From contig OZ004612.1 of assembly GCA_963924565.1 (NCBI GenBank), positions 13,082,001-13,146,000 of the forward strand: a stretch of 64,000 nucleotides of DNA, in the 5' to 3' direction. Of the stretch, positions 116 to 63,579 are shown piece by piece. The translations under genes and the position numbers were made by a program. How positions within the stretch are numbered: position 1 is the first letter of the stretch; the number at the start of each line of letters is the position of its first letter. Below the pieces are notes generated by a model that made no database searches, was not told the DNA's origin, and saw only the letters and a list, made by a program, of their open reading frames with translations. Source of the stretch: Ascidiella aspersa (lineage: Eukaryota).

Positions 116-3100
116 CACTGGCGACGCATTGGTACTGCTTCGTGGCAGGTGACACTTTGCAAACCTCCCCCGCGGCACAGCTGGTTGGCTCACAGGTCAA
201 CCTGTTGTTAGCACACGTGCATGTCGACGTGCATCCGATCGTTTTGAAAGTTGCTCTATTCTAAAATACAGTAAGTTGTATTAAAAATCAAAGTTTACTT
301 GACTGTAGCACGACGATCAATTTTGGCGTGGCGCTTTACCGAACCTGGTAAACCTGAAATCAAGTTAGAACAGGCCGCACCAAACTCCGAACTTATGAGA
401 AGAGGCCAGTCTCAATAGCTTATCTTTAGTTGCTTAATGATTTGCCTGACAACGTTGCCAGTAGAATATCAGTAATAACAACCGGTTATTAGCATACATC
501 ACTTGAAGTTAAACAAGAAAGTGGGCAAAAGTTTGTTAATATACCTTGTAGTAACGCCCGTCGGACAAGCAACCGCAGTCTTCGCGACGAACGCATTCTG
601 TTCCTGACAGTACGTAGCCATCGTTACACTGACAACCTAAAGGGCAACAAAATTATGTTACCATCCGAACTAAATAAATTTTAAACATTTGGTGATACTC
701 ATTTTCGAGGCAAAGAGTAATAAAGCGTTTGTCACAAAAGATGGTCATCTAATGTTTACCATTGTTTACTTATAAACAGAGGCCGGGTTATGCTGTAAGC
801 CTTGTAAGGCTAACCAGGAAATGTGACAACATCTGATTTTCTTGGAGGAGACAAGCTTCAATATGAACGAAAAAGTAAAAAAAATAACATTCTTTAAAAT
901 TGACATTTATAAAGGAGAGAAGACACGACCTTTCAGTTCATTTTAAACGTTTCTTCTTTCTTTTTTTGTGTTTATGGCTCTAACGATGGCCTGAGTTTAT
1001 GTCAAAACGTTTGTAGACAGCACAATTAGTCGATTTTATCGAATGTTATGACTTTGTTATTTTTATTAAAATCACGAAGGAAACCCACGTATTATGTTTG
1101 AAAACTACAAATTACTAATTAAAAGGTGCACAGCCCATCTAAAATAGCTTATCGACTCCCCGAAGCGCTGATTTGTTCAATACGTATGTGGTGTAAAACT
1201 AACACAAATAGGTATAATGTATGTTGTTCCTCAGTCATATTACCAGCAGCAAAGTTGCATCCATACCTGATACAGCGAGAGCGATACAGCGTTTGGCAGC
1301 TGTCGGATCCCGGCAAGTGTTGGGACAGGCGCTTCCCGCATGCTCGTAATGCTGGTTGGGTCCGCAAGTTTTGGCTAAAATAACAAATAACCAGTTAATT
1401 GGTAGAAAGGATTGCGTTGGTCATTTCTGTTTAGTTAACGCAATGATGAACTGGTGTGGATCCAGGGGGCTGGGCATCATGCTATGCTCACGCCAAACTA
1501 TATTTTTACCAACTTTTCTTATGTTAAAACAGCAATTTCATTATAAATACTGTACGAGTTTGTTTTATCTGCCTAATGCCTCGCACATATTCTTTCAAAT
1601 TGAAAGCACGGTCCCATTTAAACCAAATAAACGCCTTTGATTGCACTTAGGTGCGGTTTAACTGGATTAAGCTGCATTTCCGCACGAGTTTGCTCTTACG
1701 TATATCGGCTACTTCTCTCCAGTTGCACACTTCGACTCTTGCCTTTAGGCACGACTCGGCGTAATCTTCCAATGCCTGTCCGAGCGCCAGTTTGTCACCT
1801 TCGGTAATGCACATGTCGAAAAGGCAATTCTGCAAAAGAATAACCCTACGTTATTAAAAATTTGGAGTTTCCTGCTCAATAAGTAATATATATTAGTCTA
1901 ATCAATATATCATCAAATTAGGATAATTTTTCAAAGTTTCTCGCTTTTTCATTGCATGGCCATAAACTTGGATTAGGGATAGCCGATGCTATGTGTTTTA
2001 CTTCGCTACGAGATACTTGAGGTTAAAACTAACGCGGTTTAAATCAGTGTTGTAAACAAGACATTTTGAAATGACCTGAGTCCAAGTCAAGTCTTTAAAA
2101 AAAGTCCCCAGTTGCCCGAGTCAAACTCCAGCTAAGTCATTATTAGAGCAAGTCTACTCCAAGTAAAATCTCTCATATAGCAATCTATCGTTTTACGTGC
2201 AAAAGTGAGATAAATAGCTCAGTTTTATAGTAAACTGTTAAATGAAAACACCCAATGTTTGACTCAATGACTTAAGTCCAAGTCAAGTCATTTTTACCAA
2301 AACCACTTAAGTTAAGTCAAGCCATTTGAAAACAGTGACTTAAGTGTACTTAAGTACCTCCACCATCTGGGTCAACACGTTGATGTCCTGCGAAGGTCTG
2401 TCATACAAGACTGCATATGCACCTAAGTCAAGTCTTTAACTTAAGTCATCGCAACACTGGTTTAAGTCAATACTAAATGAAGCCCAAGGTTACAGTTTCA
2501 GTCACCAGCCACTTCCATTTTTTAGGCCTTCTTATCATTTTTGTCTGTATTTGTTTACACCTAATACGTTTGTCGCGCTCAGGCATTCGGCAGGTTGTTA
2601 GCAAGGATCTGATATTTATGAGGCAACACTACACCACTTGGCATCGGGTTATCAGCTCCGACCCAATGTAGTTTTTCCTTCTTGTGTATGCACGATTTGA
2701 CCCACCTTTATAATGCCTTCTGTTGGAACTATCGCCCTGCATGCGGCAAAGCACTCGCTGTCGACCAGCGAGCACATCTTGTTATATGAGTCTGCGTTCA
2801 GACAGGGTCCAGGCTTGTCGCCAAGATCGCCGTCTCGGCATCTGCGTGAAACGGAATTAGGGATGAAAACAAGGCGTTTTAAACTTCAGGATTCTATGGT
2901 CTGACTATACAGGCTTATTAAACGACGATAAAGACGACATGGGGCATTTGAACAGCGTTTTACATTGAAAGTCCCACGATTTTTTCTAATATGTTTTGTC
3001 CAAGTTTTAGTAGTCTTGTATTTTTAAAATATTATTTTCCTATGTTTACCATGATAAAACACAACGACATAATTCAAACTCGGCCATGTGTTCTAAATGA

Positions 3101-5526
3101 AATTATTTGTTCAACGCTTCCCGTTTGTATTACAACATATCTTACAGCGTTCTATGAACACTTCTTTCGTATAAATACTCGGCAATACCAAAAAGTTATT
3201 AGTTTCAAATAAGTTTATTTTTTAATAGAGCACATTATGCTTTAATTTAAAGTCTTATAGGCTATGGTCTACGTACCCCGAGGCGACTCCTCCGACCTTG
3301 TGGCTGTTACCGAAATCTATTTCATCAACCAGAACGCTCGAGTTTGTCGCAAGAGCGAATTCGTCTTCAGTCTCGCCGTTCATGTTACCGCACAGTCCTA
3401 TAATGGAATATTAGCTGTGCTTTAGAATTATATCAGGGTACCTGTGGACCGGTATTTTGCTAACATTTAAATAAAACCCAGTAGTCAAGGATTCGATTAA
3501 CATTTTTGTTAATGGGAGTTACCGAAGGCAATTTAGTTGCCTTTTAATTAGTGAAAAACTCCGGCTTGTTATGTTTGTGTTTGCATTTGAACTTAACATC
3601 ATGTTGTCTTTGATTTTGGAAGTTAAAAAGATGTGGTAATATGCTTTGGGTAATAACAAAGCCTAATCTGGCGACTATAGATATTAAACACTTCGGCTAC
3701 GGAACTATATGTATAAAGTTCTTTATGGCTCTTTACAATATGCGCTAATCATATTTGCAGCTGTCATTTATTTCCTGCTACGTTTAGAATATAAATAGGT
3801 ATAGGGGTCCAACATTGCGTTTATTCTTCCAATTAATACGACACCGCTGCATTCTGCCTTTATTGCTTCACCATCTACCGAACTGGCCACTAACCTGTCA
3901 CTTGGTTTGAGTAAGCGCCCGACAGTGTGATGAAGAAGTTTGCATTGCCATTGTAGGTTATCTCCAAACCAAACCCGGTGCTCAGGACTACGTTGTTACC
4001 CGTCAGTTGGGCTCTGATGCCGCTGGGAGTAGAGATGGGCAGTTCGGTACTGATGCTGTTCAACTGTACCGGAAGTAAATGGATAAAGTGAATAAAACCT
4101 CGACGTTGAATTAAATGTATGACAGCAGCTGAAATAGTTTGCAGTAGGTTTCCTGGGCAATCTAAGGCCGATTTATGTTTGCCTGGATTGCAATTGGATT
4201 GGTACATATTTTGTGTTCCAGATTCGCCCCGCGCGCTAATGATTTATGTATTAAAGCTTTAAAGAAAAAAAAATTAAACTACTTTTCAAAGTCGAGATAA
4301 GATACTGTCTAAAAAATTGGGAAGAAAAGTGAGCCACGAAGGCTCGAAAGAATTATAGGTTTTGTAGAGAAAGTAAATCGCGTTTCTTACGGTCATCTTG
4401 CGCTGCTTAAAAAATCCAAACGTGTCGTTGTGGATCCGGACAAAGGCCCGCTTGAACCAAGAGACCCGCTTGTTCCCGCCGCGATTTTCATTTTCCATCT
4501 GCAAAAAGCAAAATATACGTGACGTTGCGGTGAAATCCAGATGGTTGTCGACGTGTGGGATACCGCTTGGTCTCGTCATTTCACGCGCTTTTACAACAAT
4601 GATCTGTAAAAAGGATCATTTCTTTCTCTTGGAGGATGAGTTGGGAAATCGCCGAAAAAAAATGAGTTAAGTACATTGAGGCACAACATTGTGGTTGGTC
4701 ACAGAAATACTATACTGTCCTGTAGTGGTGGTTTTATATTTTCGAACAAAGGCGTGCCACAGCCTATTTGTTATATTTCCGCCCAATAGCCCAACATTTT
4801 GTGTCTTTAATCTAACATGAAATGCAAACGTAATAGAGTATGGGTTCGCTGTAAAATCCCAACATTTCCAGTTTGTAAATAAAACGCGAAACGCAAACGA
4901 ACAACGGGGCAAAATTAGGGTGTATCTTTATAGAATCCAAGACCATCGGCGGCAAGTTTTGGCAAGTCGATCACTCGTCCGCTGACGCGTATATTAACAA
5001 GTAAAACTCATAGTTAAAAACATGGGTAAAAATGGATGAGACTTTTGTGGGCATTTTTTCACTGGGCATTTTTCCCTTTCATCACTTATTTGCGTCGCCA
5101 ACTCGTTGTCCCAGTCGTGCTGGCTGCGAGTCAAAAGTGCTTTTCATTACGTTTTCTATACCTTTTTTTAGTTTATTGTCATGTTTCAATATTTTATTGT
5201 TACTTTTATTGGTTTGTTGATGGCTGCGCTCCGGTTTTATTTATTCATTTGTTCTCTTAAAGGAACTGACGATGCCACTTGGCGAAATATATTTTCCTTC
5301 TAAACAAAACGTCCAATCCTGTTTTTACTCATGTTTTGAACTATGAGTGTTACTTGTTAATATACAACAGAGCAACTTACGTAGACGGCGAATGGCTCTA
5401 GGGTTCCTTGCGTTTCGTTGAAGGTGGTTTCCACCATCCTGTACAAGCAAGTGCCCTGGAAGTCGAAGCTCTTTCCGTCAAAAGAAAGGTAATGCGGGTC
5501 GCCTGTGGCTTGGCAAGTCTGAGGGT
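116..5526 (-). CDS. Gene A exons 16-24: VWD (GDPH), C8, TIL, TILa module
   Basis: CQATGDPHYLSFDGKSFDFQGTC, ENENRGG, GLCGNMNG, CLFDMC..ALEDYAESC..NWR, CGPNQHY..CPNTC..GCQCNDGYVLSGTECV..CGC, CTSTCTC. Confidence 0.93.
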
Positions 5527-8500
5527 CTGCGGTAAAGAGCTTAAATTAAACGAAGTCGCGCAATTTATGGGCTGTTGCCATACGCACTTTATAAAATTTC
5601 TACTCGTTTAGTCGAGATGTGTAAAACTATAAATATACAGCTTGATTAACAAAATCCACCAAAATGCTATATATGAGAAAGCGTTCTGAAGAGTATGTTG
5701 GTCAACTGTCCAGCATTAATGATAGAGACGGATCCTTAATTACAGGCTTAATTTAGTTTTTTGAGCTGAAACAGCAGTATTTACATGTAAAAATGCTCCT
5801 TTTACATGTAAAATGCTTAATGCACTGTGAAATAAACAAACTGTGTATATCAAAGAATTTAAATAGATTGTGAATTTTTTTTTTATTTCACTTTTTAATG
5901 TATTAGTGGCAAAACGTCGTGGTTGATTACGAGATACAAGTAAAAGTTCGGGTAAATATTTTGTATCAGCTTCGCACATACCATCTATTACCCCCCACCC
6001 CCATGAGTACTTTTCACCTGCTAGTTTTTCCTCTCGATTACCTCTTATGCGCTAAGCGCCATACAACTTTAATCAGGTAAAGCAAACAACTCACCGACTT
6101 GTCTGCAACGCAAATCGCTTTCGACTGTCCACCTTCCGCTTGCTTGACAGATGGTTTGTGTTGGACCGTTCACAGCGTAATTGGCCCCGCACTTGAGAGT
6201 ACAGATCGACCCCATGTTGTTGACGTCTGTGCATACGATGTTGCTTCCCGGCGCGGACTTAAGCACTGGGCACTGATAATGTGAAAGAATGCATTCAAAT
6301 GGGCAACAGAGGATAATATTATACGAGAGTTGTCGTCAAAGAGAGGATTTAATAAATCTTGCAGCAGGTCGTCTTAAATAAAGCATTTTTTTAAGTTGGT
6401 TGGATAGTTATACCATTATCGTTTTGCAAACTTCTCTTGCTACCCTAGTCGCGCGAAATCTTTTGCATTAAATTGCTCAGTAGAGTACCTTTGTCCTTGT
6501 GTCTTTGACAAGAACGTTAAAACTGGTGAATAAGAACTCAGACGCTCCCGTTGGTGAGGCAGTGAATGTAACTCTGCTTAGGGTTCCAGCGATTGCGTCG
6601 CTTGGTACGTTTATGGAAATGACCACACTCGTTTGGCCGGATACCAAGTTTGCACTAAAAAAAATTGGTAAAACAAAACAAATATGTATAGGAAAATATA
6701 GGAAAACAAAACTATAGGATTACAAAACAAATACGCTTACACTTCGCCAGTGAAGGTGGTCAGTATCTCTAGTCAAACAGCTTGGCAAAAAATACCGGAA
6801 ACAATTGTAATTAATTTTTTTAGCAAAATTCCTTAAACCAAACAACAAAAATTAAACATTTAAGTTTACTAATTAGCTTTTTACAGAATCGATAAATGTT
6901 AGGGTCAATATATAGTTAATATTGTCTGACTTATACGACTCTGGCCTTCATTACCAGAACCGTTAAGGCGGTAGATTGGCACAAAGCATACTAGTTTTTA
7001 CCTAAGCCTATTGGCAATTTGACACATTTTCCCTTCAACTTACGGTGATGACACACTTGTAAAAGCACTGGGATCCGACGTCAAGAGATTAAATTGCGTG
7101 TAGTCAGCACTTCGAATGAATGTCTCCACCTGTATAAATAATAACAACATGATGACAGTTTTGGTGTTTAAAATTGTTTATAAAAGCCCACGGCGCCAAA
7201 TAATTCCGACCAAAGTAGGATGAACAAGTATTCTGTTAAACCTTTGTTCTTATCTTTTTTAAGATGGATACTAATTTGCTATTTAAAGGGCAAAATGTTA
7301 TTTTCTGGCATTTAAAAATAATTAAAGCATTCAAACGAAGAATAAATACAATTGTGCTATAAATTTTGTAAAATCAATTTATTTTTTTTCAAACTTATTT
7401 CAATACTAATTTAACTTATCGACATTCCAGTCAATCGCCCACTGTGCTATGCAGGTTCGACGGATATTTTCGACTGGTCACAAATCATACACATACGGCT
7501 TTCAGTATAGTAAATGTTTCATGGATTAACATGTTTGTTAGTTGAATTAATTCTCGGCTTACCGATGTGACTCTTCCAGCTTCCACAGTGATGTCATCGA
7601 TTGGGTCAATCGACATGTTTGCCACTATAGGCGACACGGCGCAAGGGTCCACCCGAACAAACTTGACACCGTTTTTGTATCCAGTGAATTTCTAAAGGTT
7701 AGAAAAACAGAACACTTTTTTATGAAACGGTAAAGAAGAAAGGGAAGGCCCTCCTGTTTCAACATCGCTTTGTGCCAATCACTTTCAGAAGGCGTGCATG
7801 TGAACCAGTGTTGTAATGACTTAAGTTAGAAATATAAAATCAACAGTGTGACCGAAGAAATACGGTTGTGTCTATTGCGCCTGGTTTATCAGGTTTTTGT
7901 ACTCATTTATTTCCTTTGCTATCATGCAAAAAAATAGACGAATTCCACAAAGCGTGTAGTAGTACGATCGCCTGATAAAAGCAACCACTTTCTAAAGGTT
8001 TTATTCAGTTTTCAATATCACATGTAATTGGAACTCCGTCCATGTTTATTTGGCACTAATTCATTGAGTCGCTTTATTGAAAAGACTTCCGTTGCTCCCA
8101 CAAGTCGTTACCATGGACCTTTTGCCAAACGCAAGAAATTTAAGCGAGGAATGTGGGTGCTAGGAACGTGGAACGTCGAATTCTTTCGGACGGAGGAAAA
8201 GCGGGAACGCCCATCGTCTTTTAGTCGCCCACGCAAATACCGCGACGGTGCGACACATTTTACCCTTTCGGCAAGGTTAAAGTTGCGACACGCTACGAAA
8301 CACACCCTTTTCAATCATCGTTGAAAGTCTGTCCGACAGTTTTCTGGACCCCTATACGAAAGCCGCGATTCAACTTCGGAAGTCATTTAAAATTGGGAGT
8401 TATGATTTGCATGAAGATAAAGGATAAGGTAAAACACAGAAGTCTGTTTCCTGAATCTATAAGGCGAACGCGTACCGCGCTGTGCAGCAATATTACACAT

Positions 8501-11500
8501 TTTCTATACTTATGATTGGCTTTCATTGCCATACAGGTCCCACCACATCTCCTCATTTACTCGATTCAACTGACACCAAAAATAAAGATTGCATTGTTGC
8601 TAGATGGGCCGCGAAGAGCATTCACGCAACAAAGCTCGTGTGCTGCAAATTCTCAAAAAGTCTTTGACGCGTTGCCATAGCATCTTTACAACTAATTTCT
8701 CGACACGCGTGGACAATACGCCCGAACCCACGCATTTGCGCCTGTTTGCAAATGAAAGAGCGGGAAATGTTTTTGCCACCGCGGTGGTGACACTCCCTTT
8801 TTCGCCCTACTCGTTTTTAAGTTGTTTTTGACAAAGTCCCTTTGTCCATTTTCCCGTGGTGATGAAATTAGACTGACTTGGCAAATAAGGCTCGGCACGG
8901 TAATATGTGAACAATATTTTTACGCGTAAGCATTTAACAAAGCCACTTTAAGTGCCTTCGAAAATTCCCTACTTTAGCTTGAAAAACAAGATTGGGACTT
9001 TCCTTAGTAAGGTTTTCACATGATTTAAACATTTTAACCTCTTTTGGCTATAACCAGTTAATTATTCGTCGGGCGTAATTATAAAATTAGACAATAGGGT
9101 TTTGGATCAACACCCACGCTGTCTACAAATAAGGCTATAAATCAGGGGTTCTCAAACCAGAGTTTGCGTACCCCTAAAGGCATGGAAAAATACTTTTCGG
9201 GGGTAGGCGAGGAGATAGTAGTGATTTTTCGCCACATCGACTGCAAAAATCGTTGCTATAACGTTTATGTGACTAACGAGAAAAACGTTTAAGCTTACCA
9301 AGTGCATCGTTTGAAACTACAAACCTTCACATCTTCATGAATTGCCACAAAACATCGACAAAGCACTATTGTTGGAATACATATGTGAGAAGCAAGCTTT
9401 TAAATATTTCCACCATCATAATGTTTGCATGACATGGTTTGTCTGTTTCGTGCCAAATGAGATTTTGCACTACTTTGTGACGGTACTCATCACAACATAC
9501 CGTAACTGTTTTAAATATCAGTTCATCGACGCCCGCCAATTGTTTAAGCCAGGGTTCTTTAGAAAGAGTCGGCACATATTACGCTATTAGGCCGACATTT
9601 ACTTTAGCTGAAGTTTATACTTTTATAGCAGAGAAACTACAGCTATGGCTTCCAAGCGAAAACTACACTTGTTTTGTGTTTTCAATATAATGTTTTTAGG
9701 GGTAGGTCATACAGATAAATCCAAAGGTTGGGCAGTTGAAAAAAGTTTGAGAACCCCGCGGCTACAAAAAAAATGTTTATGGATCGACACTCACGCTGTC
9801 TGCAAATGAGGCCAAACTTTTCACAAATTCTACTAGAAACTACAAAAATTGGTAAGCACTAAGCATTACTGCACTTTTAGCTCACAGCAGGGAAATATTT
9901 GCATTAGGCCAAGAGGGCTTTTTGCTAGCCCGCTGCAACGTAAGAAACCTTGAATCGAGGTCAAAAACCTTGAAAAGTTGAAAATGCACAACACGCTTTT
10001 CTTTGATGCATGGTGCCGCATATTTGCGGAGTCTCGGTAGACTGAGAAGAGATGCTTCGAAGGTTTTTCTGGGTTTAACTTGAGGTGCGCGTAAAACTTT
10101 CTTTGGTATTCAGCTCAGTCGCGTTGTTGCATATCGATTGACCATGCAATCGTTTCAAAAGTGTATTATCAGGTTTAGCAGGGGCTTCGAACCTTAGTGA
10201 CTGGACAGGTCAATAAAAAGGGCCGAATTCATGTGTTTAATTGTTCATACGTGCGATCGCCAAAATCTATTGGAGGCACCAACTTGTCTTTACAATAAAA
10301 CATTTTTCTTTTATTTGCGTGATTCGTAATTTCGGAAATATTTCGATTTGGGCCGTCGAATTGCATGCAATGCCAAAATTAATTTGTTCGCAGTTATTTT
10401 TAGGGATGTCATATGTCTATTATGACGTAGAATCGGAACCAATACTGCTAAGTGTTTGTACCGATACTCATCCGATTACAAATAAATAAATCAGTTTGAG
10501 CGGTGATTTTCAAAATAAAATTTCTAATTTTAGGGCTCCCTAATTAGGTATTGGGCATCGATTTTCCTTTCAAATAAAATCATTTTTTTCACTTTTATTT
10601 GTGAGCTTTCGTAAACCTTAACAACGCATTCGAATGACTTCATCAACTAGATCGCTTTGGATTTGTGTACAAAAACGACAACAGTTGCAAATAAAATCAC
10701 CCCCAAGTTCATCAAAACCCTTTATTCCGTTCTGCTTTGCTATAAGTGAAAGCTTCCATCTCGATTAACTTACGATAAAGAATGGCTTGTTCGGCACAGT
10801 GATAGTGCTCGTAGTGTAACTTCGCTGACCGCAATGCAAGGGCAGTTCCTGCCTGACCAGCATGGCTCCAGCCTCGTCCTGGAATTCGACAGTATCCAGG
10901 CTCGTCCCAAGCTCAAGGGGACCAAAGATGTCGGCGATGATCGTCACTTCGCTTCCTTCAAAACGAACAAAAAAAATTAAATCAAAATTGCGAGTGGAAT
11001 TTGGTCCTCGGTATTGCTTTCAAAATGGTTTGACAAAATTTTACAATTGTGGCGTTCAGTTTGAATGAAAAAAAAAACAAAAAAAAAACAAAAAAACACT
11101 TGAACCTTTATTAATCACTGTTAAAAAAACAATTTAGTAATTAATACTCTCAAGAATATTTTGTATCGATATAGCGCCCTAAAATATTTTCTATCGATTC
11201 TTCGGCCTCTAGAGTATTTTGTACATACAGATTGTGAACCCCCCCAAAAAATAGGTAACTAAATTTGTTCAAACTGTCGAGGTTACGCCAAAAAAAAAGG
11301 TTAACAGGTCTGTACAGCTTGTTTTTCAAAAACAGTTTCGCTCGCTCGAAAACACAGTTTCGCACTTTTGTAAAGCAAAACCATGAATAGCAAAATGGTA
11401 GGAGGCGCCTTAAAATAGGATCTTGTCTCGTCGTTTTTAGTCCGCCATAGCATTCAAGGCCAAAACCGTATCCGGCAAACCCGTCTATCCCTTTGTGCGG

Positions 11501-46500: not shown

Positions 46501-46926
46501 AAAAAAGGCGCCACCCACTCTCTCCCGCGGCACGCGCTTAAACTGGCGCATATCGCCCATCGCGGTTATTCGCCTATTGTTTATCTCATACTGCATGACA
46601 AACCGCTCGCGAGGACAGCACGCGTACGAACGAACAATTCGAGCGACAAGCCGCTAATACGACGACGTGCAATGCACGCAAAAGGCTCAAGCCGCTCGCC
46701 CGTTTACCCTGTTAAGCAACGGAACTCTAGCACCTCACGATGTGCACCTTGTACCGCCAGGGTCCGAGTCAGCAGCCGTAGTTTACGAAGTAAAGCTGAG
46801 AATACTGAAAACTGCAACTTAAGGAGGCCGAAACGCGACTGCGAAAGGGAACGAAAACCTGAAGAGCAAAAACCGAGCTTTTCACGAGCGAGGATTTCCA
46901 AGGATTCCAAACGTAGGAAAGGCGCG

Positions 46927-52900: not shown

Positions 52901-55900
52901 CTTTGATCACCTTGAACTACTTAAAATCACCTTAGCTACAATCCGCCTTAACGTTTAGCGATTCGGCAAACACTTTCCATAAGGAAGTTGAAAGGTTTCT
53001 CCATCAATTTACTTCCATCATTAGTAAACTCGCGTAATTCCTCATGTCAGCTAAAACATATTGGAATGAAGATTCTGTTGGTTATGACGTATGCGCTGTA
53101 ATAAAACAAAATCTAATTTGGCACTGAACCAATGGAAACGATTTTAATTTGAGGCTTTACGAGAAAGTCATTTAAGCAGAATTGATTAAAACACCCAAAC
53201 GTCCTTCACTTTTAGTTGAGGAAAATGTCACTGATGACGTAAGACAATAATGATTTAGGCCTACAACGATTTATGCGAAGGGATATTGTTCCCATTATAG
53301 CAAGTTACATACGGCGCTTTTAGCTTAAAAAGGCGGTTAATAGATTTTCGCACAGACCAATAATCAAAATCAGTGGTATGCAGTCGAGAAAATTCGAGTT
53401 TACATCAAACTATAACGTCCTTAGTATTTTGCTGGTAGTTGGGAGCCAAGGGTAGGATTTGCCCCGTATGTGGTAAAACGGTTTAACAAACTGTATACTG
53501 CTTTTGTTTCACGATCGTCCGATTTGCATTCACCACAATCGGATTAAGCCTTTTTCGGCATGTAACGACAATGCACAGGAAAGAATCGGATTAAGGAACC
53601 GGTGACGTGGAAATATACATTTAAACACGCGCGCATTGCAAAATATTTTGAGTTGAGATCGCCTCAATTTAGGTTCCTTTGATAACAACAAACTGGATTT
53701 CAAGCACTACAAGTCCACGATGCCTCGATTGTTATTAGGAATTTACTAAGTTGGATAAACCCCAAGACAATAATATAAATCGCTTTAATAAACGTGTAAA
53801 CCAGTGTACTTGCCCTCCAAACCTTACCTCGACTTGTTTTTTGGCTATATAAACGTAGAAAGAGTCGATTTTGGGGCAAAAACACAGAATATTTTTTGAA
53901 CAGGTACATGCATTGCTGCTGGGCGGAAACGAACAACACAAACGCCAACACTGAGTGGGCGATGACCACTAAAGTATTACTGGGAAACAGGAGCGACACC
54001 GGAACGGTCAACAGCGCCCCTATTGTCCATTCGCCTCTTACTATTCGGTGAGTGTATTTAGTTGGCGATTAGAATAGGTCCATCGAGAGAGAGAAGAGGT
54101 GTGTTGGAACTTCATAAATTTACTATTTGTGGTCGAAATATTTAAAAATATGCGGCTTCTGATTTTATTTGTGATAAAATTTGTTGTAACCGACTTTTAT
54201 TAGAAGTATACAATAAATCAAGATTGGCATAAAAACGATGACTGACAGAAAATGTTTTTCTGGAGTTAGTGTGTATTTTTTACTATAAACGCAATTCTTA
54301 ATACTTACCGAGCTTCAAAGGTAGGTTTGTCAATATATATTGCCTAAATCACTCAAACAAGTATATTGCCTGAATTACTCATTTGAAAAAAATAGGATGT
54401 TCCTATTGTTTTGCAAATGCTCGATGTGTCCCCCCTCTATTTTTCATACAATTGTTATCATTAAAAAAACTCAGTGGTAAATACAATACCTGACAAAATT
54501 GATATAGACGAAAGAGTGAGTTTTCAATTTTTAGTTTATAAAGTGCTATAGAATTACTTCGCGGAAATCTAAATGGACTATTTGTATAATGGCAACCGAA
54601 AGGAGTGGTGTTTTGTTAGAGAAACAGATGGGAGAGGTAGACCAGCGCCTCGAAATTCCCGTAACTTTAATCATTACCTATATATGAACAAAACCACAAA
54701 CTGCTGATAACTCAAAGTGGCGTTCGATATGAGCACCTGTTTCGCGACGTTGTTAAAAATCACATCCTATACGACTTGCCAAAGCCGGTGGTTATGGCCC
54801 TCCAAATGAGTGGTCGGAAGGCTTAAGAAGCCGCCAAGTTACGTCATTTAATCGAGCCTCAATTGACGATCCCGCGATAAGGCGGTTACAAAGAGTGAAA
54901 TATGTCCCGAGGCATTGTCGATAAAGCAGGGCATGTATGGTGCTGCAATGTTGTAAGGGGAGTTGCAGAAACTTGAACCACGTACCCTGTATAGTTATAA
55001 AACCGCACAAACTTTACATATACTTTAACATATACGGCTTGACAGTCGCCCGATTAATCCAGCAAGTCGGCAAACGTTGTTTAGCCAAAAGCGGTGGTTT
55101 TTGGCGTTGCGGTCATTGCTGGCGATTAACGAGGCGTATTGCGGCAATCGCTTTAGAGGATGGTAATTAGTAAAGTCCAAAAAATGTCAAGGGCGTGGCT
55201 AGCTTTAATTCGAAAATCCCCTTATTTGGCATTGAACAGATTGGGCAAGCGATAACACTACAAAATTAAATTGGTTTAATTTGGTTATGCCGGAAAAGTT
55301 ACAAGTTCATGCCTAAACTTTTGTTTGCTAACTTTAATGTGAATTTTCGTCCAAATATTTGACTGTTTGGTTACTTTGCTTATAGAGCTTTGATTTAAAT
55401 TTGTTTTCTGACTATGCAAATTTATCTCTGAAATTGTAAAAGTTTTTACCTAATTTTTGCCAAGTTTAACGTTTTAAAAGAGAATTTATAGACTGGCGAT
55501 TTTATTAGTTCAAAAGGCGAAAATAAGGGCGGAGCCTACAGCAGTGATTCTTAACCGGGGTTCCGCGGCACACCAGGGTGCCATTTTAACGCTCGAGGGT
55601 GCCTAGAGATATTTCAAATTATTTAGGATGCCAATTTTTGCTCTATTGGTAAGCTTCTTGGTACAATTTTTTGTGTACAATAAGAGTGCCAAAATTAAAA
55701 AAAAAATTTAAACCTTGTTGCATAGTTAATGTGCTGTTTCAATCCTGTTTATTGTACCGTTACAAATCAGCAAAAATACAACTATTTATAGTTTATCTAG
55801 GGTGCCGCAAGCCAAAAAAGGTTGGGAACCACTGGTATAGTCGATTTCACGAATATTTCAGGTATAAAAATGCTATATTTCCTCGCAGAATCGACAGTGG

Positions 55901-58900
55901 CGTTCCGTCCACAATCCAACTGAATATTAACGATCCTGATGGCGACAACGTCACTTGTCGACTTGGAAGGGAATTCGCCGAATGTGGACACGCCTGCGAT
56001 TTGCCGAAAGACTTTCAGCTCGACCACGTGAGCAAACGCGTTGGTTTTTTCTTGATGAGCGTTAAGCTTAATTTGTTTGCGTGAGACACTCCTTGTATTA
56101 AACGAGATGTAAATTCAATCAATCCGTTTACCCTTCGATTTTGATCAGTTCTGTGTAATTGGATAAAGGTGGTGCCATGGTAAACAACAGGCCTATTTGT
56201 TATTCCTGGGATAAATAATACTGTCTTGCCCTATATCCCAATAATTATTAAAATTAATAAAATACCAGTTTCTTTTTATTTTTAAAAAGGACGGACGTGC
56301 ATTTTTCATGACATAAGTTAAAACACCTTTTTAACGCACAATATTATTTTAAACTTTTTTACCATGCAAATTTAAAAAAAGGAAAACCTGACATAAATTG
56401 TTCGTTGAAAAACGAGAAGTCATAAACGCGTGCTTATCGATAGGTCAATTGCCGCCTGACTTATACGCCCAGCGAGAATGTGACAGGCAATGCAGCCGTT
56501 TCCCTGTTGGTGGAGGATTACCACCAAGACGGCTCGATCTCTGTGGGACTTTCTCGAGTGCCTCGCATTTCGCCGCTCAGCTCCACGCCCTTTCAGTTCA
56601 TCGTGCAGAGTAAGTTGGGGGACCTGAGTTACAACGACTGCGGTCGTATTGGACACGACTTGCGTTCTTGTTCTTTTCTGCGTTTTGGGCATCGCTGACG
56701 CGTCGTTGGCATGAAAGATACGTTATCGCGGGTTTTATCGTTTCGTATTAATCTAACAGAAACTTTACACTTTGTATCTAAATTTGACTCGAAAACTTAA
56801 ATTTGTCCATACATATTTTCACTCGCCATGACAGTTAATTACTATTAACAATTCCAATCTACTATGTGTTGTTGCTGAAGTAGGCCTACCATCGCTTGTA
56901 AGCTACCGCAGGCAAAACTGAGTAAATCTTTACAGAGAGCATGGGCTCTTAAAATATTTTTACCGCGGGGCTCTACAATTTTTACAATTTTTTTTCTTCG
57001 CGTGGACCACGGAAAGGCCAGAAATTGTCAACAATGACGTCACAATCAAATAGGCTTCAGAAATATGCTGATTTTTTTTTATAAATTTACGTCACAATAC
57101 AAATACACATTCAGTGCTAAAATGTTTTCTTTTTAATTAAACTCCTTTCTTTGAAAAATGAATTTTAAAAAATACACTCATATTTCAATTTGGCCTTCAT
57201 GGCCCCAATAAAATTAGTTCACAGACCCCAAGAGGCCCATGGACCCGGTTTAAGAAACCTTTGCTATAAAGTCTTTACTCCGGAACTCTAACAAAAGGTT
57301 AAGGCTACTTGTTGATTGACTGTAGGTAAGAACTTGTCAGTGTTTTGTAAACTATTATCACGTTAATTTTATTCTACCAGTCGGCGATCCAGCACCTAAG
57401 GCAAAGGATTGCAGCCAGGGCTTGCCAGATCTGAAGCTGGGCGCTAACAAAAACCACGTTACCGTTGTAAAGGTGGGCCGACGATTCACGATGGACGTCA
57501 GCGCATCGCCGTGCGACTCCAGAACCAGGTGAGTGTTTTCAGTGTTCAGGTGCCATTGATTTTTTGTTTTAGTTTCAGTTTGCGGAAGATTAATTTATAT
57601 TCGACAAGCTCTGTGTTTTGTGACAATATGCCTACTTCAGCAATTTGTTGTTTGACATCATTTTTTTTTAAGTTTATATATAGGTCTTAGGTATAGGGAA
57701 CTTTTTATCCTATACCAGCTCACTCCTGCATCAGCGCTATTTTTTATTTCCTTTTATTTGTAGTTTATTTGTGTTTACTGTTGTTGAACAGAAATGATAT
57801 TGCCTTTATTGGCGTAGGCTAACTGCATTAATCGGAATTTTAATAAAATGTTTGAGTGTTTTTTAACCTTTGTGATTCGTTTTGGATCCATTTAAAAGTA
57901 CTTTTCTTAGACCATTTTGATGACACTTAACCTAAATTTACAAAGCAATAAGGAATTGTAGTTCTTTAGTATAAAAACTCGAATTGTATTTTGCGAAAGA
58001 AGTACTTGTATTTTTTAAAATGCCAAAATATACTCTTCAGGTTAAAAAATGTGAAACAGGTACAGAAAGTGTTTTGAAACGTCAAAAGGTTCGAAAATTG
58101 TCTTGATTCTGTAGAATTTCCGGCTTTTCGATCAACGGCCCGAACGGCACAGCCCTCGGAGATTTCGTAACTGTGGGCGGCGGCGCAATGCGCACCCAGC
58201 TGTCGTGGTTACCGCGCGAAGGTCAAGAGGGTCGCTTTAACGTCTGCGTGTCGGCCCAGGCTGTTACAAAGTAAGTACGAAACCTTTGTTGAACTTGCTC
58301 ACCTAAACCTATAGTTAGATATTCGATTGACTCTGTCGACCTTATGGCCCCTGCCTTTTGGGCGTCGTGGAAATTTCGCAGGGGAAGGTGTAGTGTATAT
58401 TTGACAGCTTTGTGACGTCACAAAATCATGAATAGAAATCCAAGTTTGAAAAATAACAAGAACGTTAGTTGGCTTTAAATATTACTATCAATCGGTTTAA
58501 CTTTGTGGTAAAACCGTATCCTCGAACAATGACGCTATCTGTATGCTGAATAGCGTAATACAATTAAGAAGAGTCACGGTATCAACTTAACCGAAAACCG
58601 GAGTGACGAAATACTACGGTTGTGAATTAATTTGATGACGTTAATACAGTAATGTTGTAAAACAAAACGTGACTTAGTACGACTGCAAACTTAACGTTCG
58701 CAATACAGCCTTGTTTGCAGACTATGACCAAAAAAGTATTTACCTATTTCATGTGACATCTACTTTTGATGGTGTATTCTTTGTATTTAAAGCATTAAAC
58801 ATAAAGTAACAAAAATACATGTTGAAAATCACGCGCTTTGCTGTTCCTATAAGCTTAGCTCCAGGGGTTATGTACCGGTAAAAGCAGGATGGATAAGATC

Positions 58901-61900
58901 ATTCACGCCAATGTGTTTTTCTGTACGTACGGTAATAGAAGTGCCAGTAAAGTTTGCTTGGCAGACAAATGGAATACATATAAATGACGAACGGGTGCCG
59001 ACGTGAAAATTGCTCACTTGTGTTGGTTTGGAGATAACGGGCTTTGAGCCAATCCCTGATTTTGTTCTGCTGATGTTTTTCAGATTGTCAAGAACCTATA
59101 GAATATCGGACGAAGTGTGCGTCACCGTTCTTGTCGAACCTGGTAAGCGTCTTTATTGGTATATCGCATTTAACAAACTCTTCACTGTGAAATCAAGTTT
59201 ACAAAATTTTAACAAGCCTAAGGCATGACAGGATTTTAATCCAGTAGGTTTTCAACGAGTAACCTGCTTAGATGCAGTCCTATACAATCCGCTAGACTTC
59301 GAACAGATGTTGGCCACTTACAACACTTACAAATGACATAAGCTATTGCTGCCAGGCAAACTATATAATGGAGTGTAGCTCTTCCAGCAGTATATATAAT
59401 ATAATCGACGTTTCGACGTGCTATACAGAACGTCTTCAGTTCTGTAAAACAAGATTCCTTATAAATCGACAAGTAACAATTTGTGCGATTGCAAACTCGT
59501 TTGGTGCAATAGCGCGCGATAGCTTATCGGCATTAGACACGTCAGGTTTTACGTTCATGGTGCTGGCGCGTAAATGGATGTTCCACGACTGAAGAAAACC
59601 TCGCTTGTGGTAATCGGTTTCCTTCGTCAACACCTGAGCAGCAGAAAAGTTAATGCTGTGCTTGTGGGTAGTTGCATGGCTTGCCAACGCTGATTTCTTG
59701 GCATCCTACTTACCCACATCCCTTTCGTGCTCCTTCCGGCGCGTATTTAAACATCTAGCCGTCTCCCATTTAAACATCTACCCGTCTCCATGTAAATTTC
59801 GTCACATTCATCGCACGGTATAGCATACACCACACCCCTTGTCGCAGTGACCCGGTTGATGCAACTGCGACAAGGGGTGTGGCGATTGGGTTTTCTCATA
59901 TCCTCACAATGCTCAAAAAGTGGTTAAAATACGGCGAGCCATTACTAAAAATGCCTGCCTTGCAAACCCCTGCAGCGCGCCCGAAATTGGTACAGGGACA
60001 TGCTGGGTTTCGCTTTGATTGACGTGCGACAACATTTCCCGTCGATTTAATCACGCGCTGAACTTGCTTGCAGCGGTGGCCTACTGCCGGGGATCGGGCG
60101 GGATGCACTTCATCACTTTCGACGGGCTGCGCTACACCTTCAACGGCGGCTGCCGCTACCAGCTCGCCCTTACCACGTTCGACCCTCTGTCCAGCGTTGG
60201 CCAGCAACTGCAGTCATTTAACATCACCGTAAGTTGTCGGACGCCTATTTGTATATACTTACATAATTACGTATACGTGTCAAAAACAGCGTCGAAATTC
60301 AAATCGTTAAGTTGTTTGCACAAAGGCGCAAATTTTTATGGTTTATTACTTTATTACAAAGTTTGTCGCAAGGTAATGCTGCTATTCACACCACTTATTA
60401 TTTTCAATTGATGAAGCTAAACTTCGTATAACAAGTTAAAGCGTTTGCTTTGGATACGACACTTCTTGTTTTTGATTATTTGTATTGTTTTTGATTAATA
60501 CCGATTATTTAGTTAATATTGGTGCGATGCATTGAATTACTATTGTGAATTACGTGAAGCGATCTGACAATTACTTCGTCTAAGTTGCGTCATGTGGTGA
60601 CGATGCTTACATTACGATGTACGGCAATGTCCAAGTGGATATGCGCATAAGACCAATGTATAATGCGAAATTGTCACCGTTTCTCATACTATACCTTTCT
60701 ATGACGTTCTAGTTGCGTAGTTTCAACGAAATATGGTCGTAAAGTTTAAATCATGGGAAGCCGTTTGTAATTTGCGCTAACGAAGTTCTACTGGGTTTTT
60801 ATATTTTGTTCGAAGTTTGTACTGTGAACCCCGACCGTAATATATTTTGCGGTACATCTTCCATAATGACGTAAGGTGCGGTTTAACGTATAGCCCCGAT
60901 TTCACTGTTGTTGCTTACAAAGGCTAATACACTTGTGTATTGTCTTAGCAATTTTGGGATTATTTCCTACCAAGTGTCAACGCACGAACCAGTGCTGTAT
61001 TGGCATACCGTAGGAATTGCAGGTCTCCTTTAAATATTCCCAAGCAGCCTCCTTAGGTTATGCGCCCCTCGGCTATGCGTTGTTTAGCAACAATAGCCGA
61101 GAAATGCGCGTAATCGTTTTGTAACAGTAGATGCCCTGTTATAACGTCTCCATGGAGTTTAAGATAAAGCCGCAAGACAGCGATTTGCCTTTGTGGTGCC
61201 TAAACGTCATGCAATCTGAGAATTAGCCACAGCGCTCCTAATATATAGGATTACTGGAGGAATAGCGTATTCGTGTCACGAATTCTTTATCGGCTCGTTA
61301 GGAGAATGATGCGAAATGAAGCCCAAGGAATGCCAAAAGTTACAGGATACTGCGTGTTCCTGCTAGTCGTCCCGGTTAAGGTTATCAACTTTTTGCAATA
61401 ACCTAACCCTATAATGCGTAAGTTTTAGAATCTGGTGGAATCCAGTTGATTTTACTGACCATTTGTCGATGACCTTAATACTAACGTAAATTATAGCAGT
61501 ATTAGCGATTGAATATTTCGTTTTTGAATGCGAAATTTTTTTGCATATCTAAGCTTCGTATTGTTAAATAGTATTTGTATCAAATATTTAGAAAAGAAAA
61601 GTGAAAAAATTCCTGTGGCGCAACAGTAACTATATAGATGACCCAAAATAACTATACTATGTATAAACTACAGCGGCTGGCGATTCTAGATAAACCAAAA
61701 ACTAGTCTAACTCTATGGTCGACTTTTTAGACTTTAAAAGCTCCAAATTAGATAATTTAAATTTAATTTTAAAAAATACTTATTTACCTTTTATTCTCGT
61801 CATCAGGTTCTCAACGACTTCAGTTTGGGTTCGGACGGGCGCCCTCATGTGCGCAGCATTCGCATCACCATAGCAACAAAGACGATCGAGCTAAGAAGGA

Positions 61901-63579
61901 ACAAACGTATCATGGTGAGCTACACGTTGGTCGTTCTATTACAACAGGGGCTTCGTTTTTTAGCGCTGCCCGTCGTTTTTCGGATATGCAGGCCACATTT
62001 GGTTGTTTTTGTTTTTGCCGAAAATCCATACAGCACAAGGCGTCTTCTATAGAATTGTTCCAAGCTCAACAATAATTCATTATTCGATGGGTGGAAAGTG
62101 GTTGCACGTTTTTCCATTGCCACATCCCCTAAACAGCAGTGCACAGTCGGGTCAGAATACCGAATGCAAAGTCTTAATTTTAAGGCAACATTTATTCAGT
62201 ACAAACTACACATTGTCTGCATTACGCTCGAAAAGCACTATAATAGCTTATTCTACTTGAACGTGTCATTACAACAAAGCTAAACACCATTTTCGCAAAC
62301 TAATTTATATAGACACAAGTAAGACTTAAATCTGTACCTGATGGCAGATTTTAAGCAAGTCCGCAATTTACGCTTTCCGAATATGCTTTATAGACCTTCT
62401 ATATTACAATAATAATAATCGTTGGTTGTGCAATATTTCGTGCAATAAAGACACACGCTAATGAACTTGTCATGCAAAATTTAAATTTCCAATAGCTGAC
62501 TAAATATGTCGGTCGTGTCAATAGGTTAATTTAATGAGTTTCGTTACGTTTCAAGCGATTCGTAAGGTTTAGTGAGCATTCATCATTTAACTCGTTTGGC
62601 GAGGTTGTCCATTTAATTGCGAAAGCTTTGTACCAAACCACTAATTAGGTCAAATACGGGGAAGTTTGCTTCCCAGTGTGTTTGCCACCAAATAAGTGCT
62701 CGTGTCTCTCTACACACCATTTACTGAAAAACCTTATCTGTCCAATTATGGAATTTTGATGCCTCGACTGCTTTCCACGCCAAACCGTAACGTAAATTGA
62801 AACGCGGTTATGTGTTAGGCAATAAAATGCAAATGAGAACTATAATGACATCATCAACAGTCCGACACATGTATTGTCCTAGCCCTGAAATGCACGAGAA
62901 TCATTAAAGGATTAGGAAAAACGGGGAATTATTACCTGCGCGATGCAGTCGAAATGATGAATTATTCCAAGCAGAAACGAACCGAATAACTTTAGAAACA
63001 CATTATAAACTTAATTTCCATCCTTCCCGTTTGCTTTTAGTATACATTGCTAAAACACGATGTATTGAAGAGACGAAATACTTCCGTATAGCTAGAATAT
63101 TTTATTAAATCAAGTGATTTTTCGTTTTCAAATCGTTCAGGTCAATCTAAAAAGGCTACGTTGTTCAATATTTTTGTAGACTAAAATTATTTTCTTTATT
63201 CCTTTGCCTATAGAGTTTGACATTATTATTACCAGCTGATTTAAAAGCAAACCTTAGAATAACAAATAAAAGGCTTTGAAACTAAAAAAATGGTATACAC
63301 TACCGAGATTATTTGCTAATGCATACCTTATTATGTGTGCCATAATCCCATTGTAAAAGTTTATAGAGATATATTCCCTGAAAAAGAATTATTCACATTT
63401 TTCTGCACCACAGGTCGATGGTACGAGGGTCCACGCTCCTGTAAGATTCCGCGGCTTTAACGTCGACCTTAGCGGCAAGTATGTTCTGCTCACGGCCGAC
63501 TCCGGACTGAGCGTTCGCTACGATGGCATGTCCGGCTTCATGATCGGCCTGCCTACCCAGTATACGGATCACGTGAAAG
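46927..63579 (+). CDS. Gene B: secreted protein with Sib/integrin-beta-like 'HYRGG' N-terminal domain, beta-rich domain and VWD domain; 3'-incomplete
   Basis: 12 GT-AG exons in one open frame: 46927-47091, 50317-50458, 52386-52482, 53904-54047, 55889-56027, 56444-56609, 57381-57528, 58115-58270, 59084-59142, 60074-60228, 61807-61914, 63414-63579. Signal peptide MVVDLRGFLNKALVPAAVLFVVGVFADAAAVDA is followed by THYRGGTISWK. Confidence 0.9.
50576..50873. mobile_element. hAT MITE
   Basis: TIRs CAGTGGTTCTCAA / TTGAGAACCGCTG; TSD cgttaaga / cgttagaa. Confidence 0.8.
51219..53610. promoter_or_regulatory. Cluster of ACGT-core bZIP (CRE/ATF-like) motifs; putative intronic enhancer of gene B
   Basis: At least 11 TGACGT/ACGTCA sites plus one TTACGTAA in 2.4 kb. 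Confidence 0.4.
55542..55834. mobile_element. hAT MITE
   Basis: TIRs CAGTGATTCTTAACC / GGTTGGGAACCACTG; TSD not preserved. Confidence 0.7.
59400..59882 (-). mobile_element. Penelope-like retroelement remnant (GIY-YIG endonuclease end), antisense in gene B intron 9
   Basis: Minus-strand translation RGVVYAIPCDECDEIY.ET(G/A)RCLNTRRKEH..*..KSALASHATTHKHSINFSAAQVLTKETDYHKRGFLQSWNI. It is disrupted by a stop and a ~23-bp internal duplication. Confidence 0.85.
60074..63579 (+). CDS. Gene B exons 10-12: VWD domain
   Basis: CRGSGGMHFITFDGLRYTFNGGCRYQL..VLLTADSGLSVRYDG..LPTQYTDHVKG. The expected GLCG exon is not found within the window. Confidence 0.88.

What the first reader, a model, noticed from the sequence alone, without database searches (positions are those of the whole stretch)
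116..63579. Head-to-head pair of mosaic secreted proteins: different N-terminal heads on FCGBP/mucin-type VWD modules
Seen: two divergently transcribed signal-peptide genes about 25.5 kb apart. One has a VWA7-type head plus Sushi, the other a Sib-like HYRGG head, and both continue into VWD. Established: VWD-C8-TIL assemblies build gel-forming mucins, FCGBP, zonadhesin and tectorin. Inference: a co-regulated pair displaying distinct binding heads on a mucus, tunic or adhesive scaffold. I do not recognise either architecture as a characterised protein.
Basis: partly seen in the sequence, partly recalled or inferred. Interest (0 to 1): 0.8.

Follow-up and report, generated by a model that had tools for sequence, protein, structure and literature searches.

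The report
Head-swapped pair of mucin-like scaffold genes
Two neighbouring sea-squirt genes facing away from each other encode large secreted mucus-type scaffold proteins that share the same repeated body and tail but carry different binding heads, a tidy but not extraordinary case of domain shuffling.

Summary
Gene A (minus strand, ATG 21440) has a signal peptide, a VWA7/hemicentin-type VWA head, Sushi, then VWD-C8-TIL-TILa. Gene B (plus strand, ATG 46927) has a signal peptide, a THYRGG head, then VWD. The two start codons lie 25,486 bases apart.

New here:
- Both genes run beyond the window and share one scaffold, (VWD-C8-TIL-TILa)n-EGF-WxxW, with n about 3 in gene A and about 6 in gene B. 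They also share the VWD exon phases and a 108-nt exon.
- The best match in the genome to gene A's tail EGF exon is gene B's tail. They look like inverted paralogues with exchanged heads.
- Gene B's head belongs to a widespread animal family that databases label "integrin beta-like protein A/C" (Pfam SIBA-E_N). It is usually joined to EGF and ZP domains. Only 1 of 70 scanned relatives has a VWD.
- The hits I traced were animal proteins, so nothing supports calling the head "bacterial-type".

Co-regulation is not supported. There is no shared promoter, and a U5 snRNA gene lies between the two genes. The one RNA run, about 6% of it read, showed no reads on gene B's exons. Gene A's architecture in other species could not be tested.

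The scan had already noted parts of this same stretch (s1-801985, s1-802309, s1-802502, s1-802503).

Verdict: a new variant of a known kind, of moderate interest.

The parts
21375..21440 (-). Gene A exon 1: ATG at 21440, hydrophobic signal-peptide-like N-terminus, GT donor after 21375
   Evidence: read from the sequence, no predictor run
19749..20575 (-). Gene A exons 2 (20295-20575) and 3 (19749-20014): N-terminal region of the head. No Pfam family above cut-off (weak VWA7_4, 14.6 bits) and no paralogue in the genome
16209..19187 (-). Gene A VWA domain of VWA7/hemicentin type, on exons 18999-19187, 17945-18083, 17343-17433 and 16209-16364
   Evidence: Pfam VWA_4 at 52.6, 41.2 and 23.5 bits; splice sites; VWA paralogues
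6489..15820 (-). Gene A post-VWA head exons 15694-15820, 15226-15346, 10774-10951, 7563-7691 and 6489-6654. The last has a weak Ig_VWA7 hit. The junction 7563 to 6654 is unresolved
6095..6272 (-). Gene A Sushi exon. It follows exon 6489-6654 in phase and joins the VWD exon in phase 1
   Evidence: Pfam Sushi 30.3 bits; sites
3258..5526 (-). Gene A VWD of unit 1: exons 5381-5526 (GDPH motif), 4391-4498 (108 nt), 3895-4063, and from 3397 onward
   Evidence: Pfam VWD; sites
116..2885 (-). Gene A C8 (ORF pieces 2655-2885 and 1650-1850), TIL (1238-1420 and 539-652) and TILa (116-260). The gene continues left of the window
   Evidence: Pfam C8, TIL and TILa; donor at 116; continuation
46927..54047 (+). 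Gene B exons 1-4 (46927-47091, 50317-50458, 52386-52482, 53904-54047): signal peptide plus first head domain (THYRGG..W, CCW...RSDT..N..P), of SIBA-E_N type
55889..56609 (+). Gene B exons 5-6 (55889-56027, 56444-56609): second head domain with a DPDGD motif, cadherin-like
   Evidence: (weak tandem-95 repeat hit)
57381..59142 (+). Gene B exons 7-9 (57381-57528, 58115-58270, 59084-59142): third head domain, Ig/cadherin-like in the model of a relative
   Evidence: (exon 8 only)
60074..63579 (+). Gene B first VWD: exons 60074-60228, 61807-61914 (108 nt) and 63414-63579, with a likely further exon near 60585-60650. The gene continues right of the window
   Evidence: Pfam VWD

Best explanation
These are two real neighbouring genes in divergent orientation. 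They are paralogous FCGBP-like scaffold genes with exchanged N-terminal heads.

Each encodes a large secreted protein of the form signal peptide, head, (VWD-C8-TIL-TILa)n, EGF, WxxW.
- Gene A's head is a VWA7/hemicentin-type VWA region plus one Sushi domain, with n about 3.
- Gene B's head is a roughly 405-residue, three-domain module of the animal 'integrin beta-like protein'/SIBA-E_N family, with n about 6.

The most likely history is an inverted duplication of a VWD-scaffold gene, with heads gained or replaced by exon shuffling at a phase-1 intron in front of the first VWD exon.

The most likely function is inferred, not shown. The VWD-C8-TIL body would give disulphide-linked, partly self-cleaving (GDPH) assembly into a mucus or matrix, as in FCGBP and gel-forming mucins. 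The heads would supply different binding specificities.

The two genes are not a shared-promoter pair.
For: Shown:
- Domain calls on collinear exons of each strand.
- For gene B, ten GT-AG exons in phase, with the head spliced in phase 1 to the VWD exon.
- For gene A, the Ig_VWA7-like exon, the Sushi exon and the VWD exon are in phase, with introns of 216 and 568 bases.
- Both genes have further VWD, C8 and TIL exons outside the window.
- Both end in TILa, EGF (FXa_inhibition, 32.2 and 44.3 bits) and Mucin2_WxxW (22.5 and 27.5 bits in A; 34.2 bits in B).
- The best non-self hit in the genome to gene A's tail EGF exon is gene B's tail: 56.1 bits at 55% identity, against 39.0 bits for the next of 33 matches.
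- Both first VWD exons start in phase 1. Both genes have a 108-nt phase 0-0 VWD exon followed by an exon that ends in phase 1.
- The profile of exon 4 found 191 proteins at E<=0.001. Those I traced are animal proteins.
- Of the 70 listed hits of 300 residues or more, 27 have ZP-C, 10 have SIBA-E_N and 1 has VWD.
- The six head paralogues I read in this genome all carry EGF and ZP exons instead of VWD.
- None of the other VWA_4 loci listed in this genome lies near a VWD hit.
- GDPH motifs are present in gene A units 1 and 2 and in gene B unit 2.

From papers:
- FCGBP is built of repeated VWD assemblies and its GDPH sites are cleaved (PMC8267560 and PMC10880436; search listing and start of abstract only).
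- Ciona Ci-GFM1 is a VWD mosaic with added chitin-binding domains (PMC6109156, passages).
Against: - No RNA evidence. The single RNA run, with about 6 in 100 of it read, put no reads on gene B exons 5 to 10. The few reads it did lay fall on high-copy repeats.
- Gene A's junction 7563 to 6654 is unresolved.
- Gene A's first VWD exon matches loci on C3 and C7 (46.1 and 43.7 bits) better than gene B's units (31 to 35 bits).
- Gene A's WxxW exon matches C8:18929801 (33.4 bits) slightly better than gene B's tail (30.7 bits). Any duplication is therefore old, or the tails were exchanged separately.
- The window's own exons do not reach Pfam SIBA-E_N directly.
- Only the VWA part of gene A's head is firmly VWA7/hemicentin-like.
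- The unit counts rest partly on my reading of ORF translations.
Confidence: 0.6

Rival explanations
1. The two genes form a co-regulated head-to-head unit. The interval between them drives both, so that two heads are displayed together on one mucus, tunic or adhesive scaffold.
For: The genes are divergent, and no protein-coding gene was recognised between them: 16 ORF pieces were tested, none with a credible Pfam hit. The shared scaffold and tail would allow the two proteins to assemble together.
Against: The start codons are 25,486 bases apart. The interval holds an independent U5 snRNA gene and a perfect 828-base duplication. The one RNA run gave no reads on gene B. No expression comparison was possible. 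Clustering is common for VWD loci in this genome, with 107 VWD matches in several clusters, so adjacency needs no regulatory reason.
Confidence: 0.12
2. At least one locus is not a working single gene. Gene B could be a head-only gene followed by a headless or decaying VWD array, or gene A could be a pseudogene.
For: There were no RNA reads on gene B exons. Reading past the donor at 59142 adds about 27 codons before a stop at 59225, so a head-only product is possible. Gene A has one unresolved junction.
Against: All ten gene B exons are open with canonical sites, and the head joins the VWD exon in phase. No ATG with a signal peptide was found between 59143 and 60073, and that stretch is a high-copy repeat. 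The TAA at 20062-20064 lies in an intron in either of two canonical models. The RNA sampling was shallow and from one library.
Confidence: 0.15
3. The adjacency is chance. These are two unrelated members of a very large VWD family that happen to be neighbours, with no special kinship.
For: The genome holds at least 107 VWD exon matches. Gene A's first VWD exon is closer to loci on C3 and C7 than to gene B.
Against: Gene A's tail EGF exon has gene B's tail as by far its best match in the genome. Both genes share the TILa-EGF-WxxW ending and the VWD exon structure.
Confidence: 0.1

Closest known systems
FCGBP (IgGFc-binding protein) of vertebrates
   Same: A secreted protein with a unique N-terminal part followed by repeated VWD-C8-TIL assemblies. 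Some carry GDPH self-cleavage motifs. There is no PTS mucin domain.
   Different: The heads are different (VWA7-type plus Sushi; SIBA-E_N-type). There are fewer units (about 3 and 6). The tail is EGF plus WxxW. Orthology was not tested.
Ciona Ci-GFM1, a mosaic gel-forming mucin (PMC6109156)
   Same: A tunicate VWD scaffold that carries added binding modules. This is a precedent for a specific binder on a mucin-type body.
   Different: Ci-GFM1 has the D1-D2-D'D3-D4-VWC-CK order of mucins and VWF, with chitin-binding domains. Here the units are uniform and FCGBP-like, no CK was seen, and the binders are N-terminal heads.
Animal 'integrin beta-like protein A/C' / SIBA-E_N head proteins (for example Ciona LOC100180926, and the Mytilus and Mizuhopecten entries)
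   Same: The same three-domain N-terminal head, directly after the signal peptide, with collinear motifs (H-x-R/Y-G-G, CCW...RSDT, DPDGD).
   Different: Those proteins continue into EGF and ZP (27 of 70), Sushi arrays, EGF arrays, CUB or chitin-binding domains. Gene B continues into VWD-C8-TIL repeats.
Amphioxus protein annotated 'TECTA' (P0109, CAH1266756.1)
   Same: The only scanned relative in which this head occurs with VWD and C8.
   Different: It has a single NIDO-VWD-C8 followed by fn3, ZP, SEA and EGF (alpha-tectorin/MUC4-like), not repeated FCGBP-like units.
Dictyostelium SibA-E adhesion receptors
   Same: They share the N-terminal domain family (Pfam PF24907) found in relatives of gene B's head. 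They work in substrate adhesion (PMC9197732).
   Different: Sib proteins are type I membrane proteins with a VWA domain and a talin-binding NPxY tail. I did not see any of these features in the parts of gene B that I read.
Vertebrate VWA7 and the hemicentin N-terminal VWA
   Same: Gene A's VWA exons match Pfam VWA_4 and no other VWA model at E<=1. There are weak hits to two VWA7-specific models.
   Different: VWA7 has no Sushi or VWD-C8-TIL continuation that I know of (recalled, not tested). Gene A's first 180 residues match nothing.

Membership tests
FCGBP-like VWD scaffold proteins | Repeated VWD-C8-TIL assemblies in tandem | tested here: met
   Pfam VWD, C8, TIL and TILa on unit 1 of gene A. 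Further VWD, C8 and TIL exons of both genes found by Pfam on the genome, by tblastn and by ORF reading. About 3 units in A and about 6 in B.
FCGBP-like VWD scaffold proteins | GDPH self-cleavage motif in VWD domains | tested here: met
   The motif is present in gene A units 1 and 2 and in gene B unit 2. It is absent or altered in the other units. Cleavage itself cannot be tested here.
Gel-forming mucins / VWF | [quoted passage not shown] | tested here: not met
   The tails are TILa-EGF-WxxW. No PTS-like ORF or CK was seen in the ORF listings. This was not an exhaustive search.
VWA7 / hemicentin-type VWA proteins | VWA domain of Pfam VWA_4 type | tested here: met
   52.6, 41.2 and 23.5 bits on three consecutive exon pieces, against a cut-off of 27 for a whole protein.
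VWA7 / hemicentin-type VWA proteins | VWA7-specific Ig-like and beta-sandwich domains after the VWA | tested here: inconclusive
   Ig_VWA7 scored 16.2 bits. VWA7_4 scored 13.9 to 14.6 bits, and on an exon that lies before the VWA. Both are under the cut-off. Four other head exons have no hit.
SIBA-E_N head family (animal 'integrin beta-like protein' entries) | Direct match of the window's exons to Pfam PF24907 | tested here: not met
   No hit on exon pieces at E<=10. No exon-wise hit anywhere in the genome. The domain is split over four exons of about 31 to 55 residues.
SIBA-E_N head family (animal 'integrin beta-like protein' entries) | Homology of the head to proteins that carry PF24907, collinear over the whole head | tested here: met
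   The profile of exon 4 found 191 proteins. 10 of 70 scanned carry PF24907 above cut-off. A profile of 50 relatives hits exons 1-6 and 8 in order.
Dictyostelium Sib proteins proper | VWA domain, transmembrane helix and cytosolic NPxY tail | tested here: not met
   I saw none of these in the parts of gene B that I read; the tail I identified is EGF-WxxW. Only the N-terminal domain family is shared.
Bidirectional (shared-promoter) gene pair | Divergent starts within roughly 1 kb (threshold recalled) | tested here: not met
   25,486 bases separate the ATGs, with a U5 snRNA gene in between. Transcription starts are unknown.
   Of the 10 hits traced, 8 carry NCBI records of named animals; the other 2 have only unnamed Logan or JGI/IMG records. 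NCBIfam gave only one weak hit, tandem-95 repeat at 12.9 bits, on exon 6. Bacterial genomes were not searched directly.

The most novel reading that the evidence does not exclude
The two genes are a functional pair as well as paralogues. They would form one extracellular scaffold system, co-assembling through identical VWD-C8-TIL bodies and EGF-WxxW tails while presenting two unrelated binding heads. Gene B would then be the first case in which the widespread, uncharacterised animal SIBA-E_N head sits on a polymer-forming body. That would give a direct way to find out what this head binds.
Probability: 0.2. Interest if true: 0.55.

Novelty: new variant of a known kind. Interest (0 to 1): 0.36.

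Why it matters
If the models are right, this locus shows exon shuffling caught side by side. One scaffold gene was duplicated in inverted orientation, and the copies were fitted with two unrelated heads at the same phase-1 intron.

It also draws attention to a large animal protein family, the SIBA-E_N-type head. That head is mostly joined to ZP domains, and databases name it after Dictyostelium Sib proteins. My paper searches found the database names only in two papers (search listing only). A version of this head on a mucin-like body could help to test what it binds.

For sea-squirt biology, these are candidates for components of the mucus net, gut mucus, tunic or adhesive. No data here say which.

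Tried and rejected
- The search for homologous proteins on single exon pieces found nothing. The tool only sees proteins of similar length, so this says nothing about full-length relatives.
- The ESM Atlas on gene A exon 2 gave only scores of 0.77 to 0.78 to unrelated clusters. I did not use it.
- Pfam PF24907 against the genome exon by exon found nothing, in the controls either.
- The own-genome search with gene A exon 2, and with the open stretch 20065-20166, found only themselves. Paralogues therefore could not decide between the two models of gene A exon 3.
- tblastn of gene A's head exons against three VWA_4 paralogue loci matched only the VWA exons. The junction 7563 to 6654 stays unresolved.
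- Foldseek and VIA searches with the model of a relative's head gave only generic matches to cadherin and Ig arrays and to bacterial adhesins. The VIA rows cover mainly residues 260-373, so the fold of the first (SIBA-E_N) domain was barely tested.
- I considered a micro-exon model for the link from the head to the VWD (58381 and 59976-59989). I rejected it in favour of exon 59084-59142, which matches the family's conserved end of the head and has strong sites.
A canonical AG at 20014 follows the donor at 20295 in phase. Alternatively, a 51-base GT-AG intron (20065-20015) removes the TAA.
- I could not test whether gene A's architecture or the adjacency exists in other species.
- Supplementary files of papers were not consulted. 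Those of PMC6109156 and of ascidian proteome or expression papers might list relatives of these genes.


Full report
What the window is. GC content is 35 to 47%, and coding sequence is broken into short exons. The window is C6:13082001-13146000 of a 308.6-Mb, 75-contig genome. An earlier follow-up in this scan calls the genome a sea squirt (s1-801600); I did not check that.

Gene A (minus strand).
- Translating stop-to-stop pieces and scanning them one at a time against Pfam gave a collinear series on the minus strand. It runs VWA_4 on three pieces (52.6, 41.2 and 23.5 bits), a weak Ig_VWA7 (16.2), Sushi (30.3), VWD on three pieces (34.8, 23.0, 19.7), C8 (37.2), TIL on two pieces (21.9, 22.3) and TILa (32.1).
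- The ATG at 21440 opens a short exon with a hydrophobic N-terminus and a GTTAGT donor.
- With canonical GT-AG sites the exons chain in phase from 21440 to 10774, and from 6654 through the Sushi exon (6272-6095) into the first VWD exon (5526-5381).
- One junction, 7563 to 6654, has no in-phase pair of good sites. A small exon may be missing, or a weak donor may be used.
I find instead that the donor at 20295 joins a normal AG acceptor at 20014 in phase. Alternatively, a 51-base GT-AG intron (20065-20015) removes the TAA. Neither model could be confirmed, because these exons have no paralogue in the genome.

Gene B (plus strand).
- The ATG at 46927 is followed by a hydrophobic stretch and then THYRGG.
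- I defined ten exons (46927-47091, 50317-50458, 52386-52482, 53904-54047, 55889-56027, 56444-56609, 57381-57528, 58115-58270, 59084-59142, 60074-60228). All have AG and GT borders and consistent phases. All are open, and none of the seven split codons is a stop.
- The last head exon ends in phase 1, and the first VWD exon starts in phase 1.
- Later VWD exons are 61807-61914 and 63414-63579.

What the head of gene B is.
- No exon piece hits Pfam. NCBIfam gave only a weak tandem-95 repeat hit on exon 6.
- Exon-wise searches of the genome found paralogues on C4, C2 (two) and C7 (three). I read six of them. All have the same head exons followed by an EGF exon and ZP-domain exons, and the C4 copy also has a membrane anchor.
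- I aligned the exon-4-type exon of the window with those of five paralogues (A1) and used it for the one whole-library profile search. It found 191 proteins at E<=0.001 and 7 at E<=1e-10. The match typically lies about 100 to 170 residues from the N-terminus.
- Of the 150 listed hits, 70 have 300 residues or more. All 70 were scanned against Pfam, 63 and 7. ZP-C is in 27, ZP-N in 24, SIBA-E_N (PF24907) in 10, and VWD in 1. The 80 shorter hits were not scanned.
- The single VWD case is an amphioxus protein annotated TECTA, made of head, NIDO, VWD, C8, fn3, ZP, SEA and EGF.
- Source names for ten hits include Ciona LOC100180926, 'integrin beta-like protein C' of Mytilus and Mizuhopecten, 'integrin beta-like protein A' of a fish, and uncharacterised frog and fish proteins. 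Two had only unnamed Logan or JGI records.
- A profile built from 50 of these relatives (A3, containing no window sequence) was run against all 3,508 ORF pieces of the window. It hit seven pieces, all on the plus strand and in order along the profile: exons 1-6 and 8, at E 1e-12 to 9e-3. The next pieces scored E 1.8 and 9.6, and exons 7 and 9 were missed.
- The head is therefore a full-length member of this animal family. Nothing I found supports 'bacterial-type'.
- An AlphaFold model of one relative (the Mytilus protein P0019) is confident over residues 20-375 and consists of three beta-sandwich domains. Structure searches gave generic matches to cadherin and Ig arrays and to bacterial adhesins. 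The VIA rows cover mainly residues 260-373, with Z about 9. The first domain's fold was barely tested.

Both genes outside the window.
- Pfam VWD matches on the genome, tblastn with gene A's unit exons, and ORF listings of the flanks show further units. There are about three VWD-C8-TIL-TILa units in gene A, reaching about 11.4 kb left of the window. There are about six in gene B, reaching about 31 kb right of it. The counts rest partly on my reading of translations.
- After the last unit, both genes have a TILa exon, an EGF exon (FXa_inhibition, 32.2 and 44.3 bits) and Mucin2_WxxW exons (22.5 and 27.5 bits in A, 34.2 bits in B).
- Genome-wide, gene A's tail EGF exon has gene B's tail as its best non-self match: 56.1 bits at 55% identity, with the next of 33 matches at 39.0 bits.
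- The VWD exon structure is the same in both genes. The first exon starts in phase 1. A 108-nt phase 0-0 exon follows (4498-4391 in A, 61807-61914 in B). The next exon ends in phase 1.
- Against a recent duplication: gene A's first VWD exon matches loci on C3 and C7 better than gene B's units, and its WxxW exon matches C8:18929801 slightly better than gene B's tail.
- None of the other VWA_4 loci listed in the genome (26 matches, including a cluster at C1:5.95-6.17 Mb) lies near a VWD match. These counts are lower bounds.

The interval and expression.
- Between the genes lie a full-length U5 snRNA match (30644-30752, minus strand, 50.5 bits against a gathering score of 40) and a perfect 828-base direct duplication. 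There are no tRNA genes.
- Sixteen ORF pieces tested there gave no credible Pfam hit.
- One RNA run of the same species label was on offer. About 6 in 100 of it was read and laid on 54400-60399. It gave 40 reads, all only partly fitting and all on stretches that are high-copy in the DNA run. None fell on exons 5 to 10.
- This does not show that the gene is silent, but it gives no support for expression or for any junction.

Reading.
- Shown: the domain content and order, the in-phase canonical junctions, the shared scaffold and tail, the family of gene B's head and its usual partners, and the distance and content of the interval.
- Inferred: that each locus is one transcript, that the products are secreted, that the pair arose by inverted duplication with head exchange at the phase-1 intron, and that the bodies assemble like FCGBP or mucins while the heads bind different ligands.

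Papers.
- I saw only the search listing and the start of the abstract for the FCGBP papers PMC8267560, PMC10880436 and PMC11796319.
- I read passages of PMC6109156 (the Ciona Ci-GFM1 mosaic mucin), PMC9197732 (Sib proteins as Dictyostelium adhesion receptors) and PMC9953650 (endostyle transcriptome; it names no relative of these genes).
- Not found in print: 'VWA7' with 'VWD' gave 0 papers. The names 'integrin beta-like protein A' to 'E' gave 2 papers, of which I saw only the search listing.

Verdict. The co-regulation part is unsupported. This is a new variant of a known kind (FCGBP-like VWD scaffolds with novel heads), of moderate interest.

Noticed in passing
window 30644-30752 (-): Full-length U5 spliceosomal RNA match (RF00020, 50.5 bits, gathering score 40) in the interval between the two genes.
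   Followed up: no
window 41910-43564: Perfect direct duplication with 828-base spacing (300-nt reference copies at 41910-42209 and 42738-43037, 100% identical; identical ORFs at 42425-42736 and 43253-43564). It could be a very recent duplication or an assembly artefact.
   Followed up: partly
G000 C4:5129800-5150324 (-); C2:27117019-27124000 (+) and 27136000-27148751 (-); C7:20782568-20787248 and 20838566-20844370 (-): Paralogues of gene B's head, each followed by EGF and ZP-domain exons (the C4 copy also has a furin-like site and a membrane anchor). The two C2 copies are convergent. The C7 copies are near-identical tandem copies, with a third hit at C7:20952669.
   Followed up: partly
window 55600-55850, 57000-57200, 59200-59800: Interspersed high-copy repeats inside gene B's introns. 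Word depth in the DNA run is 2,000 to 9,000, against about 60 elsewhere. The few RNA reads laid fall on these stretches.
   Followed up: no
G000 C1:5957748-6173101: Cluster of at least eight VWA_4-type (VWA7/hemicentin-like) gene copies on both strands, with no VWD match nearby.
   Followed up: no
G000 C8:18920451-18929941 (-): A weak VWA_4 match and the best non-self match to gene A's WxxW exon lie 9 kb apart on the same strand. This may be another VWA/WxxW mosaic gene.
   Followed up: no
window 1-64000: Rfam at gathering score found no hammerhead ribozyme in the window.
   Followed up: no
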